Part shown: in pieces, positions 6,955 through 64,000 of the stretch
How positions within the stretch are numbered: the first letter of the stretch is position 1
Layout: the number at the start of each line of letters is the position of its first letter
Origin: Lepidodermella squamata
Taxonomy: Eukaryota; Animalia; Gastrotricha
Reading direction: 5' to 3'
DNA length: 64,000 nucleotides
Assembly: GCA_047495785.1 (NCBI GenBank)
Contig: JBLDXI010000025.1
Span: 1,054,001 to 1,118,000, forward strand
The notes under the pieces: generated by a model
What the model saw: the letters and a program-made list of their open reading frames with translations, nothing else
The model's database searches: none
What the model was told of the DNA's origin: nothing
Program-made: the position numbers and the translations under genes

Positions 6955-8630
6955 ATGGTCCGGCTTGACACACACTATACTGCGTTACCTAGGCGGAAAG
7001 CTCAAAACATCATTCTTATCGGAAGTAAGCATATTTCATCAGATAAACTTTTCGCAACCTTTTTCTCGGGCGTTCATAGCTTCCGTGACTTTGGCGGTGT
7101 GGTATTTATGCCGCAAAATCAAGCTTTGGTACAGTTATAGGAAAGTTGGGTCATTACTGCAGTCAATACCGGGCGATGGAACGTTCGACCACTTCCCGTT
7201 CGGTGCCTTAGCTCAGCCGAACTACGAAGGCTTGGCTAAGCGGCAGAAATATGGACCCATCTACCGCATTTACCATTACAGCACCCCGATTATGTGAGTA
7301 TTCAGCAATTATTTTAGAGCTATTATGGAGAAAGTGTGATGACAGAGTTCTAGCTCAGAGTAAACTGGCTGTTGAATGGTACCGAGACAATACGAAAAGC
7401 GTATCCCGCGACCATGGTTTGGCAGTTATGGGCCCAATGCTCAGCCATTTAATGGGCCAAGCAGTCGGGTTCGAAGCTGGAAAAACCTGGCAACGATGTC
7501 GGACCATGTTCAAGCCAGACTTCATGCCGAAAGCAGTCGAAGAAAACTTCATCATTATGCAAGAAGAGGTCGATAAATGGTGTCAAACTTACCTGACAGA
7601 CGGCGCTGTTCTCGACTTTTTCTGGAGTGAACTTTTCAAACTACCGTTCAACGTACTGAAACGGCTCATGTACGGTAAATTGATAGCGGAGAGCGAGACG
7701 GAAGACGTTTACCGCATGGCAATGGAAATGAGTGCACTTAGCGCTGATTCAGCGATCAAACCCATTTGCAACCAACGATTTTATCTGTCGCTGCCGACTG
7801 ACAGAAAGAGACGCTGTTTCAAGCTGAAAAATGACTGGCATGCCTTTAACAAGGAAAAGTATGAAATGCTACGCAGCGGCAAGGTTTCTATCCAGGATGG
7901 CGGATGTTTCGCCCAGGTATTTCATCGACTCTTCCCCGAGGGTTTGCCGCCATTTGAAGAGATCAATCATGACGATCTAGAGATGATTATTCAATCGATG
8001 AATGAGAACCTTCTGTTCAACAATGACGTGACAAATGCAGTTTTGATGACTAACTTGATCACTCTAGCCCATGAGAGGCATGTCCTGGACGAATTGTATG
8101 CCGAATTGAAACAGGCTGCGAGTAATGTTGATTCATCCGGGGTTGTGGATTGTAATTCTTTGCTATCCTTGCCTTATCTTGATGCTGTTATCCGCGAATG
8201 TGGCCGCCACAAGCCGTTTCTAACGATTACAGTCGCTGAGCAGACGCTGGATGATATAACTCTTGGTGGGTATCGTTTATCTGCCGGGACCTTCATCTGC
8301 CTGGATGCTGAAGCGATTAATTTTGATCCTGAAGTATGGCCAGAGCCTGAAAAGTTTGACCCGATGCGTCACATGGGCGAACGCAAGTCTGAACTCGATT
8401 TTCACCGCTTCGGTCTAAATCCTAGGAGGCAATGCCTTGGCTTCCGATATGCTCTGGCTGTGATTAAACTAGTGATTTGGCACATTGTAACGAAATATGA
8501 TATCGAAATTCACGGCAATGATAAGGAAGCTATATATCGCCGATGGAGAACGGAAAAGAAGAAATGGGGCCTGCCCTTCATTACGCCGTACATGTCATTT
8601 CCGAAAATCAAAATCCAAGCTAGAGCCTGA
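6955..8630 (+). CDS. Cytochrome P450, 3 exons (6955-7024, 7080-7293, 7346-8630)
   Basis: GT-AG introns 7025-7079 and 7294-7345 join three ORF-track frames into one. N-terminal anchor NIILIGTSVTLAVWYL, K-helix ECGR, WPEPEKFDPMRH, heme motif FGLNPRRQCLG; AATAAA at ~8676. Confidence 0.9.
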
Positions 8631-30434: not shown

Positions 30435-31889
30435 TTAGGTTTCGAGCATCTGCAATCGGTCCAAAGTCCCAAGGGCGATTTGCTGCCGCATGCGCAGGAT
30501 GATAATACTTTAAATCGGAATAAATAAAAGATATCAAGTTAAACGAATAGATCTTACATGGTAATCGCGAGCCCAATGCCCAAGAGGCCGACTAAGGTTC
30601 CTAGAGTCGCAATAATGGCAACAGAATCGTCCCCATCTTTTGGAGCTTCTGTCGTAATTGTGGTCGATGATGGTGACTCGGTTGGCGATTCTGTTGGAGT
30701 AGTATCTCCCTCTGTAGAGGTTGATGGAGTGATTGGAGTAGTAGTTCCCTCTGTAGAGGTTGATGGAGTGATTGGAGTAGTAGTTCCCTCTGTAGAGGTG
30801 GATGGAGTGATTGGAGTAGTAGTTCCCTCTGTAGAGGTTGATGGAGTGATTGGAGTAGTAGTTCCCTCTGCTGAGGTTGATGGAGTGATTGGAGTTGTAA
30901 CTCCCTCTGTTGATTGCGTAGGCTCTACCGTGGTTAGCGTTGTCGGAGAATCTGTTGTAACTGGTACTTCATCGCAAGATGATCCATTCGCAATAATGGA
31001 ATCCATGTTCACCCCATTACACATGCTGCCGCAGCATGTACAGGCCTTGTCGAAAGACCTAATCATACCAGATGTCGTATCACTTGTTGCACTCGAGCCA
31101 CATCCTCCAACACCCTGCGGCAACGTTAGACAGCCCCAATAGTAATAGGGGACTAAATCATTGATCAAAGAACTGTATTTCTATGGAGAAATGAGGCAAA
31201 TGTTTGAGTAAGCTGTTATATATTGAAGCATTTACCGCACAGTGCTGATTCATGGTGCACGAAATCGCTAGATTTCTAGATGGCAACGTGTTACTTTGCG
31301 GGTTGTTCTTGGTTAGAAATATTTTTTAGGAGCATTGAATAGGATAGTTCTCTTACCCAATCATCGGAACCATGGCAGTTTTTATCGAACAAGGGATAGC
31401 TGTTGCACTGATCGTCCAATCTTGCGTCGTTGCAGCCATCCCCACAGCATGTACAAACCCTTCTATACCTGTAAACATCATCTCCGTTGGTATAAACCGA
31501 GCTTTGAGTTTCTAGACCGTCCTCTGCGACGTCGCCGCATTTGTATCCGAAAGCGGCCCCGAAGACTGATTCACCGGATAAGCATCGCCATTGGTAGAAT
31601 ATCGACTCTGTTTTATAGCCATTGCCGTCAATTCTAATCTCAAGATTGTAGACTTTCTGGATATTTAAGAAAGACAAACGCTTTTTATAGAAATGAGTTA
31701 GGGAAAGCTTCTCACAGCGCATGAAGACCAGCAATCTTTCAATGTGTTGTTGTCAGGCAGTATCCCTTCTTGGGTGACATTAGCCGCAACTGTTTGGTCA
31801 AAGTTGTAGCATAAAAGAGCCGATATCGGAGAAATCAAAGCAATTATAATCAGAAATATAGTAGTCAGTATAAGCTCAAGAGGCATCAT
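30435..31889 (-). CDS. Type I membrane protein with two Ly6/uPAR (three-finger)-like domains and a mucin stalk, 5 exons
   Basis: Signal peptide then LLCY; two CTCCGxxCN motifs (CTCCGDGCN, CTCCGSMCN); TPITPSTSTEGTT repeats; TM VAIIATLGTLVGLLGIGLAITIIII; short tail ending LQMLET*. GT-AG introns restore the frame. Confidence 0.8.
30695..30910 (-). repeat. 39-bp coding tandem repeat (~5.5 copies)
   Basis: Unit GGAGTAGTAGTTCCCTCTGTAGAGGTTGATGGAGTGATT, encoding a 13-aa Thr/Ser/Pro repeat. Confidence 0.95.
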
Positions 31890-59876: not shown

Positions 59877-60352
59877 GATTTTCATAGTCAGTGGGGTGAA
59901 ATTCGTGTTACACGTAACGCGAATAAAACCATTCCACGGTTTATTGTTCAGATTGAATGAATTTCGCACCTTGCCACGAGCATTACTTCAGCATGAAAAG
60001 GTGTTAAAAGCAGGGTGCGATCTTGGATACCGGAGCTGCCAGGGTTGGAAAAACGTTTTGCTGTTTTTGCCGAAATGAGTAGTCATTATAACTCAAAAGC
60101 GAGCGAACCGACGAAATGGTGAAGGTTTTCCACTAAAACACGCCTCAAAACCTCTCAAAATTGACGAAACAATCGTTTTGTTGTCTGGCCTGACTGTTTG
60201 AACGATATCTGTCCATGTATTGTTTTAGGTCGCACCGGCCTTCTTTCGAAATTCTTTCGAAAGAATGGATTACCAGCTTGGCAGAAAATCAAAACAATCA
60301 AACTGAAAGTTCCTTGGCGAAGTTTATTCTAGATTTCAGTGCGCTAATGTGG

Positions 60353-61645
60353 TTAAACGTCAAATTTAGTGTTTAGCAGCCATGTATTGAGTAAAGAGAA
60401 ACTAGAGGCCACCAACTGCAGGCAAAGCTCTCCGTCTTTCGCCAATGTATTAGCTAATTGCTGATTACTGAAAATCGTCCGACTCGAGTTGAATGCTTTT
60501 AGAACTGCTTGCCTCGTCTCTTGGAAAGCTAGGAAGGAAACACTAGATCTACCCAAAAGCAAATTAAGCTTATTTTACCAAGTTCCTTCTCCTGGGTTTT
60601 GAGGATAAGAAAAGTTGCCAGATAGGCAACAACTGTCTCAGAGGGATGCATCTTGTCGAGAAGTGAGATCAACTCCTTATGGCGAATGATAGCTGTCTGT
60701 TAACATCAAGCAAACATTTGTTTACGAAATTTAACAAATTAGAAAAATACTTTGAGATTCGGGAAAAGCTCCTCGAAATCATTTTCTAAGCTTTGGTCGA
60801 CCCCGAAAATAGACCCCGAGGCAGATCCAGGTAGTGACTGGAGAAGGATTGAACACTCTGCGACGTAATCTGTCCCACTCAAGATGTTGTCAATGGCCTC
60901 AGCGTGGCCGAATTTTTCTATGTTAAGGATTGATGTAGCTAGCTCGCGAAACAGAACTAAGGGAACTCACCCAGTAGAATCTTACAGAAACTTCGCGAGG
61001 TGGTAATGGTATTGGAGGCACGAGTAGGAGTTGCATTGACGCTCGAGTTCTCCACTTGCTTCTCAGCCTGAAAAAGAATGATGAAGACGTATTTAGCATT
61101 TTTAAAATGATTAGAAACTTACGGATTGGAAGCATTGTAAGATAACAGCTTCAAGTTTATCTGGGGTTAGGTAACTTGCCAAGCATTGAGTTTCCTTGCC
61201 TTGCTCCTCTGTCTGATTGAGTCTGATAATCAACTTCACGTCTTCAGTGTAGGGCATGCTTTTGCCTGTTATGATCAATGAGAGCATTTTTAAATTTTTT
61301 AATTATAAAAAATGATGTAAGACGTACTCCTTAGACCGGCTCTAATGCATTTGATAAGGCGACATCTGGCACAACCATGTCGCGCCGCCAGTCGAATAAC
61401 ACACTGCTCATTACCAGCTAAGCATTTCAGCTCAGAAAAACGAGCAACGTGGCGACGGAAGAACTTCTATATGCTCATGTAAAATGATCATTGTTTATTC
61501 TAGTATTTCTGCAAATTACGCTGCATGCTTCACAGGTGCTCGGCCAGTATTCAACCCGCCTAGGGACGACAGTCTCGCAAACCTTGCATCGCTTGCTCAA
61601 CACCAGGGAATCAACTTGTTCGGTCTTAACCGTTTGCAGAGCCAT
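60353..61645 (-). CDS. Divergent nuclear hormone receptor (C4 zinc-finger DBD plus degenerate LBD-like region), 7 exons
   Basis: Exon 1 (61645-61520) and exon 2 (61466-61328) give CKVC...TCEACS|KFFRRHV...LKCLAGNEQCVIRLAARHGCARCRLIKCIRAGL, with all eight zinc ligands. Five further GT-AG-bounded exons stay open to the stop at 60353. Confidence 0.88.
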
Positions 61646-62821
61646 TATAAAAATAAAATTGAGACGAGTTTTCGTGAAACAAAACTGAACTTTTGGCGCG
61701 GGTCATACGCTGGTTGTTTTATATGAATAAATTTTAGTGCGAACACAAGCATGTCGGTTGTTATGTGCTCATTGTTGTGTGTAGCCGTCCGCGCTGGTCC
61801 GCTCGGCCGTCAGTGATAATCCTAAACTAGTAGCTGCAGCAACAAAAAGCCGTCAACAAAGCAGCAATGAAAACTCTTGATGAAAGCTCGACAATAAAGG
61901 ATAGTGATACATTGCACTGTTGGTACATTTTTTATTTTGTTGTTACCATGACTTCATTTTTCCATCTAAATTTAATTAATTACTATATATGTATAAGTTT
62001 ATAGTTTAACCGCTTGAACAATAAAATTAACTCGAAAGTACGAAGTACGAAGGTAACAGAAAAGCTTATTTACCTCTTCTCATTCTAAAGCGGGATGGGC
62101 AGAACATTTTTATCCAAAGCCCTCAGTTCAGTCGTAATCATTTCAAAACCAACTGAAGAAGTGACCAAGGAAGATATTTCAATGCTTCAGAGTGAAGATC
62201 GATTCTAATAAAAGGCGAAGCCATTGCAAAAGCCAGCAGGATCGGTACAGAATTAGATAGCACTATCTACCAGAAGTGAGGGCTAGCGATCACGCATGAT
62301 CTGGCCGCGGGTCATTTCTATAGCAAAGGAAAAAAGTCCCTGTCCTAACCTAAGGAGGATCCAGTATAATCTGGCGCTAAAGACTATAGGGGCGGCATTG
62401 TACATATTCTCCTGCCTCCTGCGATTTGTGTTGGTCGTTTACCGAAGTTTTCTTGCCTAAAATCTCAAATTCCCTCAAATTCTCTCGATTTTAAGGTAGT
62501 AATTGCAGCTGAGAATCATCACTTTTGGGAAATACAGCATTTTTGAATATGCACAACATAGAATTATCTCTCACATTGTAGCTGATTGGTTCTGAGAAGG
62601 TTAGTCGAAACAGTTGGCTGCAGAAAAAACTAAAATCAAGTGCATTTTGCCTGTTGAATAAACAGTCGCAGACAGTGTGCGTTAATTCCGCCGGTCTGAC
62701 GCAAAAAACTGACGCATGTTCGGTGCAGACATGTTTTTTCCGCATATCTGCGCACGCCACTGGCGAAGCGGCGGATGTTTACGAAAATCGGACACAACCT
62801 TACTCCTGGACATCTCGAGGG

Positions 62822-62828
62822 TATAAAT
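62822..62828 (+). promoter_or_regulatory. TATA box of the cellulase gene
   Basis: TATAAAT about 60 nt upstream of the signal-peptide ATG at 62882. Confidence 0.5.
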
Positions 62829-62881
62829 TCCCAATTCCTGGCCACAAAATCTCATCCTCATCACTCAATTTTGAAATTATC

Positions 62882-63956
62882 ATGAAATCATTCGTTCTTC
62901 TCATTCTTTTGATCCTTGTCAACGCGGCATCGTCTCAGCAGTGTGCTGGCGCATTTGCGCAATGTGGCGGTCAAACATGGACTGGGGCTAAATGTTGCGT
63001 CTCTGGCTACCAATGCCAGTACAACAACGATTGGTACTGGCAATGTGTTCCGATACCGACTCAATCCAACGGCTGTTCGAATGGCCAATATGCCCAATGT
63101 GGAGGCAATGGTTACACAGGCCTAACGTGCTGCCCAACCAACTATGTCTGCATCTATTCGAATGACTGGTACTCACAATGCAGGCCAAGCTCCGAAGCCT
63201 CGACCGCGCCCACAAGTTCTGCACCATCTGTAACAACGTCAACTGGAGCTCCTTCGACTAGTACTACAACAACCACTACAACTACTACTACCCAGTCCCC
63301 TACTACATCTACCACTACTACAAGAGCACCTTCTACCACTTCGGCCGGTACTCAAGCTCCATCTTCTTCCACTACCCCTTCAGGAGCTTGTAACAACCTC
63401 CTTTGGAACCAATGTGATGGTATCGGCTATAATGGTCCTAAATGTTGCCCATCCGGTTCTGTCTGCGTCTATGGAAATGACTGGTACTGGCAATGCAAAC
63501 CTGGATCTACCGATCCTACAACTCAACCTCCTCAAACTTCAACAACTCCTGCAGGACCTACCACAACTCAAGCCCCACCGCCAACAAGCTTCAACTACGC
63601 TGAAGTTCTTGGAAAGTCGCTCACCTTCTACTATGGTCAAATGTCTGGCAACATTTCGGGAACATTCAACACCTTAACGTGGCGAGGAGACAGCGCTATG
63701 ACTGATGGTGCTGATAATGGCGTCGATCTGACTGGTGGCTATTACGACGCTGGAGATCATGTCAAATTCAGCCATCCCATGTCTTACTCAATGTACATGC
63801 TATCATTCAGTGGATTGCTATACGAGCAAACCTACAAAGCTACAGGCGAGGAATGGCAAAGACTCCTTAATGTTGTCAAATGGGGCACGGATTATTTCCT
63901 CAAAAGCCACACTTCCCGATATGAATTCTATGGACAAGTCGGTCGAGGTGAACTTG
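62882..63956 (+). CDS. Secreted GH9 endo-beta-1,4-glucanase with three N-terminal CBM1 domains (first exon; gene continues beyond window)
   Basis: Signal MKSFVLLILLILVNAASS; three QC(G/D)G..(W/Y)xG..CC....C...NDWY(W/S)QC modules; Ser/Thr/Pro linkers; GH9 motifs YAEVLGKSLTFY, WRGDSA, DLTGGYYDAGDHVKF, VKWGTDYFLK, YGQVG; donor GTAAGT at 63957. Confidence 0.93.
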
Positions 63957-64000
63957 GTAAGTCTATGGACCATCAAATTTCGATATTTTGAATATTTTTT

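What the first reader, a model, noticed from the sequence alone, without database searches (positions are those of the whole stretch)
62882..63956. Animal GH9 cellulase carrying three fungal-type CBM1 cellulose-binding modules
Seen: signal peptide, CBM1-CBM1, Ser/Thr linker, CBM1, linker, GH9. Established: GH9 is the ancestral animal cellulase family and, where modular, usually carries other CBM types; CBM1 is mainly fungal/oomycete/algal and typically attached to GH5/6/7/45 or AA9. Inference: a chimeric enzyme made by grafting horizontally acquired CBM1s onto an endogenous GH9, possibly targeting crystalline cellulose. All three CBM1s sit in one uninterrupted exon. The adjacent nuclear receptor argues against a fungal contaminant.
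Basis: partly seen in the sequence, partly recalled or inferred. Interest (0 to 1): 0.85.

Follow-up and report, generated by a model that had tools for sequence, protein, structure and literature searches.

The report
Animal cellulase resembling giant-virus cellulases
A small invertebrate carries an expressed, spliced gene for a secreted cellulase with three cellulose-binding modules, and both its enzyme part and its binding modules look most like cellulases encoded by giant viruses, not like the usual animal cellulase.

Summary
Window 62882-63956 (+) is one exon encoding a signal peptide, CBM1, CBM1, a Ser/Thr linker, CBM1, a Pro/Thr linker and the first 122 of 444 positions of a GH9 catalytic domain. 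The two catalytic Asp residues are present. A nuclear-receptor zinc-finger exon lies 1.4 kb upstream on the other strand, next to an array of M13 peptidase genes. A transcriptome-like run from another study covers the exon, starts about 20 nt after a TATA box, and reads across the donor at 63956 into GH9 sequence.

The interpretation, that CBM1s were grafted onto the ancestral animal GH9, is not supported. The gene lacks both intron positions shared by mollusc, insect and barnacle GH9 genes. It scores below all 20 sampled animal GH9s against an animal profile. In trees it falls with a metagenomic clade found on giant-virus-type contigs, including five IMG/VR contigs of 28-244 kb and a 290-kb contig with a DNA polymerase B gene. 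These proteins already combine GH9 with 6-Cys CBM1, and one has a colinear CBM1-linker-GH9. The tree rests on 123 columns and the AU test is not decisive (p 0.09).

Unchecked first-reader notes of this scan flag a 2xCBM1-GH9 gene and a GH9-CBM3c gene on other DNA of this genome.

The parts
62822..62828 (+). TATA box (TATAAAT) of the cellulase gene
   Evidence: Read directly from the sequence. A transcriptome-like contig of run X2 begins at 62843, about 20 nt downstream (table 8, record 13).
62882..62938 (+). Start codon and predicted signal peptide (residues 1-19)
   Evidence: Residues MK, a hydrophobic run, then AASS, directly before the first Cys of CBM1-a. Judged by inspection; no predictor was run.
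62939..63052 (+). CBM1 module a (residues 20-57, 6 Cys)
   Evidence: One of three Pfam CBM_1 stretches. Its best matches among 167 modules are the CBM1s of the giant-virus-type GH9 proteins P0307, P0310, P0309 and P0306.
63074..63187 (+). CBM1 module b (residues 65-102, 6 Cys)
   Evidence: Pfam CBM_1. Best matches are a basidiomycete yeast module and unnamed metagenomic modules; the P0315 (viral-clade) module is among the top five.
63188..63388 (+). Ser/Thr-rich mucin-like linker 1 (residues 103-169)
   Evidence: Composition read from the sequence; weak Pfam Mucin match. Run X2 holds a variant with a 9-nt deletion at 63339 (table 4).
63389..63502 (+). CBM1 module c (residues 170-207, 6 Cys, QCDG instead of QCGG)
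   Evidence: Pfam CBM_1 best stretch 174-202. Aligns to solved CBM1s 4bmf and 1cbh with the aromatic face kept. Best match is the CBM1 of the viral-clade protein P0313, which shares QCDG.
63503..63586 (+). Pro/Thr-rich linker 2 (residues 208-235)
   Evidence: Composition read from the sequence.
63587..63956 (+). N-terminal quarter of the GH9 catalytic domain, with the catalytic Asp pair at 63746-63748 and 63755-63757
   Evidence: Pfam PF00759 positions 1-122 of 444. PDB GH9 endoglucanases match at E 1e-35 to 1e-25.
63957..64000 (+). Start of intron 1 (GT donor, phase 1, between GEL and DH of the G-x-G-x-x-DH motif); the gene continues beyond the window
   Evidence: An X2 contig aligns up to 63956 and then continues with 30 letters that translate in frame as DHSVWVSPER, the expected GH9 continuation (tables 7 and 8).
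61302..61702 (-). Two exons of the DNA-binding domain of a divergent nuclear receptor gene, transcribed away from the cellulase
   Evidence: zf-C4 PF00105, E 8.5e-8, for 61302-61466. The upstream exon 61478-61702 carries the first C-x2-C ... C-x2-C finger by inspection.

Best explanation
This is the first exon of a real, transcribed and spliced host gene of a small invertebrate. It encodes a secreted endo-beta-1,4-glucanase. After signal-peptide cleavage, three N-terminal 6-Cys CBM1 modules on glycosylated Ser/Thr/Pro linkers would hold the enzyme on the flat faces of crystalline cellulose through their aromatic strips. The GH9 domain, an inverting hydrolase with an Asp-Asp base pair plus a Glu acid encoded beyond the window, would cut the chains. 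The likely role is digestion of cellulose-walled food. Domains, motifs, transcription and splicing are shown; binding, activity and role are inferred. On origin, the GH9 and CBM1 parts most likely share ancestry as one cassette with a family of SP-(CBM1)-GH9-CBM3-like-linker-CBM1 cellulases found on giant-virus-type contigs. That points to horizontal transfer between that gene pool and this animal lineage (direction not established). The gene then gained a spliceosomal intron, and the N-terminal CBM1 was multiplied or rearranged. It is not a graft of CBM1s onto the ancestral animal GH9.
For: Domains. Host setting: a nuclear-receptor zf-C4 exon and M13 peptidase and piggyBac genes. Run X1 has a 2838-nt contig covering 59999-62836 that reaches the promoter, and X1 depth stays continuous into the exon.

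Expression and splicing: run X2 comes from another study. It shows GT..AG joints of 50-148 nt in the M13 gene, no depth over intergenic DNA, depth 39-102 over the exon, a contig starting at 62843, and a spliced continuation after 63956.

Not the animal type: the introns at YGQ|VG (Haliotis, Gryllus, Amphibalanus) and YD|AGD (Haliotis, Gryllus) are absent here. The query scores 156 bits against the animal profile versus 183-219 for 20 animal sequences.

Viral-clade link:
- Trees give splits of 100/98 and 99/93.
- The motif TFYYGQ was seen only in this gene and clade members; one contig out of 78 usable GH9 fragments from the fetched loci carries FYYG.
- Five of 13 diagnostic columns are shared with the clade.
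- Clade members lie on an IMG/VR GVMAG contig with Rpb5, on four more IMG/VR contigs of 39-244 kb, and on a 290-kb contig with DNA polymerase B and an intein-bearing dUTPase.
- All carry 6-Cys CBM1.
- The L090 protein has SP-CBM1-linker-GH9, colinear with residues 174-358 here (37% identity, E 2e-31).
- CBM1 modules 1 and 3 match clade CBM1s best.
Against: Only 123 alignment columns of GH9 lie in the window. The AU test does not reject placing the query with the animal/plant/fungal clade (p 0.092). Profile scores are nearly equal: viral clade 162.7, bacterial 161.5, animal 156.3. Raw identity to all groups is 52-59%. Long branches are involved. The ten residues read from exon 2 (VWVSPER) look more like Haliotis and the chytrid than like the viral clade. 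CBM1 is about 36 residues, so best-match ranking is weak evidence. No viral genes flank the gene in the window. The viral nature of the contigs rests on gene content and IMG/VR labels, not on isolates. The spliced contig in X2 is a roughly 90% identical variant copy, not the exact window sequence.
Confidence: 0.6

Rival explanations
1. One reading: the GH9 domain is the vertically inherited ancestral animal cellulase, fast-evolving in this lineage, and CBM1 modules acquired separately from a fungus or oomycete were fused to its N-terminus.
For: GH9 is widespread in animals (one search lists cnidarian, tunicate, mollusc, arthropod and hemichordate proteins). The AU test does not reject a eukaryote-clade placement (p 0.092). 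The exon-2 residues VWVSPER resemble Haliotis. Unchecked scan notes say CBM1 is fused to many other gene types in this genome, so a mobile in-genome CBM1 pool may exist.
Against: The query lacks both conserved bilaterian intron positions. Its animal-profile score is 27 bits below the lowest of 20 animal sequences. Forcing the query and all animals into one clade is rejected (p 0.010). It shares TFYYGQ and EW-x-R motifs with the viral clade only. The nearest GH9 relatives already carry the same 6-Cys CBM1 type, one of them in the same N-terminal position.
Confidence: 0.15
2. Two independent acquisitions: the GH9 came from a bacterium or a microbial eukaryote such as a chytrid or protist, and the CBM1s came from this genome's own CBM1 pool. 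On this reading the resemblance to giant-virus cellulases is long-branch attraction plus convergent architecture.
For: The highest raw identities are to unnamed and cyanobacterial GH9s (57-59%). The bacterial profile score equals the viral one. A chytrid (Nowakowskiella, P0006) combines GH9 with C-terminal CBM1 while its GH9 groups elsewhere in the tree, which shows that the fusion can recur.
Against: Split support of 99/93 to 100/98 places the query with the viral clade. Rare motifs are shared in both the GH9 part (TFYYGQ) and the CBM1 part (QCDG). The match to L090 is colinear across CBM1, linker and GH9.
Confidence: 0.17
3. Not a host gene: a contaminant contig, an assembly chimera at the receptor-cellulase junction, or a fragment of an integrated giant-virus genome.
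For: The closest relatives are viral or metagenomic. X1 contigs break between 62836 and 62984. X1 may be the sample the assembly was made from.
Against: The break is a variant bubble. The variant X1 contig spans about 62806-63014 and overlaps the 59999-62836 contig, and depth is continuous (tables 2, 3, 8). The gene has a TATA box and a GT donor used in RNA. GC is 0.48 against a window GC of 0.43. Transcripts of this gene and of the neighbouring spliced M13 gene co-occur in a run from a different study. There are no viral hallmark genes in 64 kb.
Confidence: 0.05

Closest known systems
Giant-virus-type metagenomic GH9-CBM3-like-CBM1 cellulases (P0132, P0304-P0318; loci L008, L090-L096). I found no paper describing them. 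[quoted passage not shown]
   Same: GH9 N-terminal motifs (TFYYGQ, NTL-x-W, EW-x-R). 6-Cys CBM1 modules, including the rare QCDG form. Pro/Thr/Ser linkers and a signal peptide. The L090 protein has CBM1-linker-GH9 colinear with residues 174-358 here.
   Different: Those genes are intronless on dense, ORFan-rich contigs with viral hallmark genes. Most have CBM1 only at the C-terminus, after a CBM3-like module. Here three CBM1s are N-terminal, the gene has a spliceosomal intron and animal neighbours, and whether a CBM3-like module follows is unknown. Identity is only 37-56%.
Ancestral animal GH9 endoglucanases (termite, abalone, crustacean, tunicate types)
   Same: Same catalytic family and the same Asp-Asp motif; secreted digestive role is plausible.
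   Different: Animal genes share introns at YGQ|VG and YD|AGD that are absent here. Where they are modular, the Pfam columns list CBM2 (PF00553), not CBM1. The query falls outside their clade and scores well below them on an animal profile.
Horizontally acquired cellulases of microscopic animals, such as the Adineta ricciae GH45 with an ancillary CBM (Szydlowski et al. 2015, as cited in PMC6509783)
   Same: A foreign-type cellulase with a CBM that is otherwise seen mostly in fungal proteins, domesticated in a small invertebrate and expressed.
   Different: A different catalytic family (GH45 versus GH9). The donor inferred there is fungal or prokaryotic, not giant-virus-like. No triple CBM1 is reported.
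Chytrid GH9 with C-terminal CBM1x2 (Nowakowskiella sp., P0006)
   Same: The only named organism found in these searches that combines PF00759 and PF00734.
   Different: Its GH9 groups with the eukaryotic clade, not with the query. Its CBM1s are C-terminal and only 37-42% identical to the modules here.

Membership tests
Glycoside hydrolase family 9 | Sequence match to the GH9 catalytic domain profile | tested here: met
   PF00759, E 2.4e-38, positions 1-122 of 444. PDB GH9 chains match at E 1e-35. Only the first quarter of the domain lies in the window.
Glycoside hydrolase family 9 | Catalytic Asp pair in the D-A-G-D-H motif | tested here: met
   YYDAGDHVKF at 63740-63769, aligned to the same motif in 8u49 and 2xfg.
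Glycoside hydrolase family 9 | Catalytic acid Glu near the C-terminus and a complete (alpha/alpha)6 barrel | not testable with these tools
   This part is encoded beyond base 64000. Only 10 further residues are known, from an RNA contig's loose end.
CBM1 (fungal-type cellulose-binding module) | Profile match, about 36 residues, conserved disulfide Cys pattern | tested here: met
   PF00734 in three stretches, E 2.7e-33. Six Cys in each module, the Cel6A-like pattern.
CBM1 (fungal-type cellulose-binding module) | Three aromatic residues forming the flat binding face (Y5, Y31, Y32 of Cel7A CBM1) | tested here: met
   In the alignment to 1cbh the face residues are W, W, Y in module 3. The equivalent residues are F/W/Y and Y/W/Y in modules 1 and 2 by the same register.
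CBM1 (fungal-type cellulose-binding module) | Binding to crystalline cellulose | not testable with these tools
   Needs a pull-down on Avicel or bacterial cellulose.
Ancestral animal GH9 clade | Shared intron positions (phase 0 at YGQ|VG; phase 1 at YD|AGD) | tested here: not met
   YGQ|VG is present in Haliotis, Gryllus and Amphibalanus, and YD|AGD in Haliotis and Gryllus. Here the exon runs through both sites, and the only intron lies 16 nt after the first.
Ancestral animal GH9 clade | Phylogenetic placement within animal sequences | tested here: inconclusive
   The free trees exclude the query (99/93, 100/98). Query plus animals as one clade is rejected (p 0.010). Query plus the whole eukaryotic clade is not rejected (p 0.092). 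The animal-profile score lies below all animal sequences.
Giant-virus-type GH9-CBM1 cellulase clade | Clade-specific GH9 motifs and tree placement | tested here: met
   TFYYGQ and EW-x-R are shared. Splits of 100/98 and 99/93. The profile score of 162.7 lies within the range of true members (123-211) but is not higher than the bacterial score.
Giant-virus-type GH9-CBM1 cellulase clade | CBM3-like module after GH9 and a C-terminal CBM1 | not testable with these tools
   The C-terminal part of the gene is outside the window. A first-reader note (s1-410411) reports a GH9-CBM3c gene elsewhere in this genome; this was not checked here.
Giant-virus-type GH9-CBM1 cellulase clade | Viral genomic context (dense intronless ORFs, hallmark genes) | tested here: not met
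   The window has animal genes, introns, a TATA promoter and no viral hallmark genes.

The most novel reading that the evidence does not exclude
A complete modular cellulase (CBM1-GH9) moved between giant viruses and an animal lineage. This gene was the entry point of the CBM1 domain into the genome, which then spread by domain shuffling into ion-channel, lectin and other surface-protein genes noted elsewhere in this scan. That would make it a documented case of a virus-borne domain seeding a lineage-specific family of cellulose-sensing proteins in an animal.
Probability: 0.2. Interest if true: 0.85.

Novelty: new variant of a known kind. Interest (0 to 1): 0.62.

Why it matters
Foreign cellulases in microscopic animals are known, for example nematode GH5 (my own knowledge) and bdelloid rotifer GH45 (PMC6509783). 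Three points here are new. A GH9 in an animal that is not of the ancestral animal type would show that possession of GH9 cannot be taken as vertical inheritance. The nearest relatives form a family of CBM1-bearing GH9 cellulases on giant-virus-type contigs; I found no paper describing it, and a 2025 preprint calls a viral cellulase-like gene potentially novel. Finally, a triple N-terminal CBM1 on GH9 is an architecture I found in no other sequence among 1.8 billion representatives. If the virus link holds, it gives a concrete, datable case for gene flow between giant viruses and animals. It would also give a candidate source for the many CBM1 fusions that scan notes report in this genome.

Tried and rejected
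- **Close relatives of the whole protein.** The exhaustive HMMER search and the word-based search found nothing above 59% identity, and no other N-terminal CBM1-GH9. Extended alignments to CBM2-GH9 proteins were linker bias.
- **Identifying the host.** The intronless P450 at 7251-8630 has no relative above 35% identity (23% for the top hit) and is not on record. The Atlas search with an M13 exon gave no phylum. Run and organism names are coded. Other agents' guesses (rotifer, nematode) were not verified.
- **Intron-position test for vertical descent.** Negative. Clytia GH9 is intronless and so uninformative. The Ptychodera protein was not on record.
- **Metagenome scan.** 80 loci were kept, none above 55% identity. 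Apart from the giant-virus contig already found in the viral collection (L011 = L008), none has a CBM1 motif.
- **Literature.** Searches for CBM1 with GH9 in animals, with rotifers, and with giant viruses found no description of this architecture. Green-algal GH9-appended Cys-rich modules are explicitly not CBM1 (PMC6032398). One search was badly framed and gave nothing.
- **Codon composition.** GC3 is 0.42 here versus 0.47-0.57 in M13 exons. The difference is too small to argue either way.
- **Not run.** No structure prediction was run because the domain assignments were unambiguous.

Full report
**1. What is in the sequence**

From the ATG at 62882 an open frame runs without a stop to a GT at 63957. 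Pfam finds three CBM_1 stretches (PF00734, E 2.7e-33). It also finds the first 122 of 444 positions of Glyco_hydro_9 (PF00759, E 2.4e-38) at residues 239-357.

The layout is:
- a hydrophobic N-terminus that looks like a signal peptide (inspection only);
- CBM1-a (residues 20-57);
- CBM1-b (65-102);
- a 67-residue Ser/Thr linker;
- CBM1-c (170-207);
- a Pro/Thr linker;
- the GH9 domain from about residue 236.

Each CBM1 has six Cys. Against the solved CBM1 of cellobiohydrolase I (1cbh), the residues of the flat aromatic face (chain positions 5, 31, 32) are aromatic, and N29 and Q34 are kept. The GH9 part aligns to solved endoglucanases at E 1e-35 and contains the catalytic Asp pair in DAGDH. 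The catalytic Glu lies beyond the window.

**2. It is a host gene, and it is expressed**

The rest of the window holds several animal-type features:
- a tandem array of M13 peptidase genes on the minus strand;
- piggyBac transposase remnants;
- two exons of a divergent nuclear-receptor DNA-binding domain, 1.2-1.6 kb upstream of the cellulase ATG on the opposite strand. The exon at 61302-61466 matches zf-C4 at E 8.5e-8.

Two public runs hold the stretch.

Run X1 holds 96% of the sampled words and may be the source sample. It gives a 2838-nt contig covering 59999-62836, which reaches the TATA box at 62822. A variant contig overlaps that contig's end and runs into the exon. The break at 62836 is therefore a variant bubble and not a gap.

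Run X2 comes from a different study and behaves as RNA:
- It has joints with CT..AC ends (GT..AG on the minus strand) skipping 50-148 nt inside the M13 gene.
- It has no depth over the intergenic bins 60801-61400 and 62401-62800.
- It has depth 39-102 over the cellulase exon.
- One X2 contig starts at 62843, about 20 nt after the TATA box.
- Another aligns up to 63956 and continues with 30 letters that read, in frame, DHSVWVSPER. This is the expected continuation of the GH9 G-x-G-x-x-DH-x-x-W-x-x-PE motif.

That last contig is a roughly 90% identical variant (a second haplotype or copy), and exact-match contigs are present too (tables 3 and 8). The gene is therefore transcribed, and its donor site (phase 1, between GEL and DH) is used, at least in the variant copy.

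**3. Is the GH9 the ancestral animal one?**

I tested this in three ways.

*(a) Introns.* I mapped the genomic loci of GH9 genes from Haliotis, Gryllus and Amphibalanus. All three have a phase-0 intron exactly at YGQ|VG. Haliotis and Gryllus also have one at YD|AGD. The window gene reads straight through both sites and has its own intron 16 nt after the first. Clytia's gene is intronless. A negative result is weak in a lineage with high intron turnover, but a positive one would have been strong and it was not found.

*(b) Profiles.* I scored the query against HMMs built from the 123 shared columns. It gets 156 bits against animals, where all 20 animal sequences score 183-219 in leave-one-out. 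It gets 161.5 against bacteria and 162.7 against the clade described below, whose true members score 123-211. It is not a typical animal GH9, but it is not a deeply nested member of any group either.

*(c) Trees (LG+C20+F+G4, 123 columns).* The query is sister to the metagenomic protein P0132 (100/99). With P0132 and a giant-virus MAG protein it forms a group at 100/98. With 16 clade members added, a 99/93 split separates the query and that clade from all 49 bacterial, animal, plant and fungal rows. Forcing the query and the animals into one clade is rejected (p-AU 0.010). That constraint also forces animal monophyly, however. The cleaner constraint, query plus the eukaryotic clade already present in the free tree, costs 19.3 log-likelihood units and is not rejected (p-AU 0.092). 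The tree evidence is therefore suggestive and not decisive.

**4. The relatives**

Searching with P0132 gave a set of proteins at 42-59% identity to it (P0304-P0318). Pfam shows their architecture as signal peptide, GH9, a weak CBM_3 match, a Pro/Thr/Ser linker, and one or two C-terminal CBM_1 modules.

Their contigs are dense, intronless and ORFan-rich, and carry giant-virus-type genes:
- L008 is IMG/VR contig GVMAG-M-3300023179-119, with an Rpb5 subunit, DUF5872 and patatin next to the GH9 gene.
- L090 is a 290-kb contig with a family-B DNA polymerase, a dUTPase with an intein-type match, GH20 and GT90.
- L001 has SWIB, an SMC-like ATPase and ankyrin.
- Four further IMG/VR contigs of 39-244 kb carry the same gene at 58% identity to the clade's P0306, the first sequence of the clade alignment used as query, each with a 6-Cys CBM1 about 1.9 kb after the GH9 start.

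In L008 the CBM1 is interrupted by one in-frame TGA.

In L090 the database start codon is too late. The open frame extends upstream to a signal peptide and a further CBM1, giving SP-CBM1-linker-GH9-CBM3-like-linker-CBM1. BLASTP aligns residues 174-358 of the window protein colinearly with CBM1-linker-GH9 of that protein (37% identity, E 2e-31).

**5. Shared derived characters**

- Every other GH9 I looked at has F-Y-E-A-Q near the start of the domain. The window gene and clade members have T-F-Y-Y-G-Q. Among the 78 usable GH9 fragments extracted from the loci fetched in the viral and metagenome scans, only the GVMAG contig has it.
- The motifs NTL-x-W and EW-x-R are also shared.
- Of 13 columns where the clade majority differs from the majority elsewhere, the query has the clade state at 5, the general state at 4, and neither at 4. 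This fits an early-branching relative.
- The CBM1 modules point the same way. I compared 167 modules from 37 proteins, a sample that includes the best CBM1 hits in the 1.8-billion-protein library. Module 1 matches the CBM1s of clade proteins P0307, P0310, P0309 and P0306 best. Module 3 matches that of P0313 best, and both have the unusual QCDG in place of QCGG. Module 2 matches a basidiomycete yeast module best, with the P0315 module in its top five.

CBM1 is short, so this is supporting evidence only.

**6. Reading**

The most economical account is that GH9 and CBM1 came into, or left, this animal lineage together. They would have moved as one cellulase cassette shared with a giant-virus gene pool. 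The gene then acquired a spliceosomal intron and a host promoter, and its N-terminal CBM1 was multiplied to three. At 37-56% identity the event is old, and the direction is not established. The viral family is diverse and found in several sample sets, which favours the virus or its unknown host as the reservoir. However, intron-containing eukaryotic genes are under-represented in metagenome protein sets.

**7. Function (inferred)**

The protein would be a secreted endoglucanase held on crystalline cellulose by three CBM1s on glycosylated linkers. It is probably used to digest cellulose-walled food. For the viral relatives, a role in breaching a cellulose-containing host wall is plausible. [quoted passage not shown]

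**8. What is known, and novelty**

- A carbohydrate-binding module otherwise seen mostly in fungal proteins (CBM1 or CBM10) on a foreign cellulase in an animal has a precedent in the Adineta ricciae GH45 (PMC6509783, citing Szydlowski et al. 2015).
- GH9 together with CBM1 occurs in a chytrid (P0006).
- I found no paper describing GH9-CBM1 in animals or in giant viruses.
- No other protein with N-terminal multiple CBM1 before GH9 turned up.
- Unchecked first-reader notes of this scan flag, on other DNA of the same genome, a 2xCBM1-GH9 gene and a GH9-CBM3c gene. They also flag CBM1 fused to ion-channel and lectin genes; one of these, the ion-channel case, has a follow-up agent report. I did not check any of those loci.

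I class this as a new variant of a known kind (a foreign modular cellulase domesticated in a small animal), with an unusual and testable link to giant viruses.

**9. Limits**

Only the first quarter of the catalytic domain is in the window. The host species is not identified.

Noticed in passing
window 8917-59406 (-): A tandem array of at least ten M13 (neprilysin-type) peptidase genes with few, short introns (50-148 nt). At least the last copy is spliced and expressed in run X2.
   Followed up: partly
window 7251-8630 (+): A single-ORF, apparently intronless cytochrome P450 (459 aa). It has no relative above 35% identity (23% for the top hit) in the word-based search; the best hits are an unnamed Logan protein, a zoopagomycete and Mycobacterium. 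It could be a very divergent or foreign gene.
   Followed up: partly
window 60008-60171: A short high-copy repeat. X1 depth jumps from about 110 to about 4600 here, with many alternative joints and loose ends, which suggests a MITE-like element between the last M13 gene and the nuclear receptor.
   Followed up: no
window 61928-62356: Low-depth X2 contigs with 'opposite strands' joints in the spacer between the receptor and the cellulase. They could be a hairpin-forming transcript or a library artefact.
   Followed up: no
window 62892-63862, and the 9-nt deletion at 63339: A second copy or haplotype of the cellulase exon, about 7-10% divergent, is present in both the DNA-like run and the RNA-like run, at roughly 40% of the depth in X1.
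   Followed up: partly
window 30554-31168 (-): An ORF with a Thr/Pro-rich tandem repeat (TPITPSTSTEGTT units), a Cys-rich N-terminal part and a hydrophobic C-terminal end. It looks like a mucin-like surface protein.
   Followed up: no
L090 7653-10001: The database protein P0315 starts too late. The open frame extends upstream to a signal peptide, a Cys/Pro-rich stretch and an extra N-terminal CBM1. This giant-virus-type cellulase therefore has CBM1 modules at both ends.
   Followed up: yes
L008 6960-7070: The C-terminal CBM1 of the GVMAG cellulase is interrupted by one in-frame TGA, at the position where related viral-contig CBM1 modules have Gly. This could be an assembly error, a pseudogenised module or stop-codon reassignment.
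   Followed up: no
L004 501-2666: The Clytia hemisphaerica GH9 gene is intronless (721 codons in 2166 nt), unlike the mollusc and arthropod GH9 genes examined.
   Followed up: no
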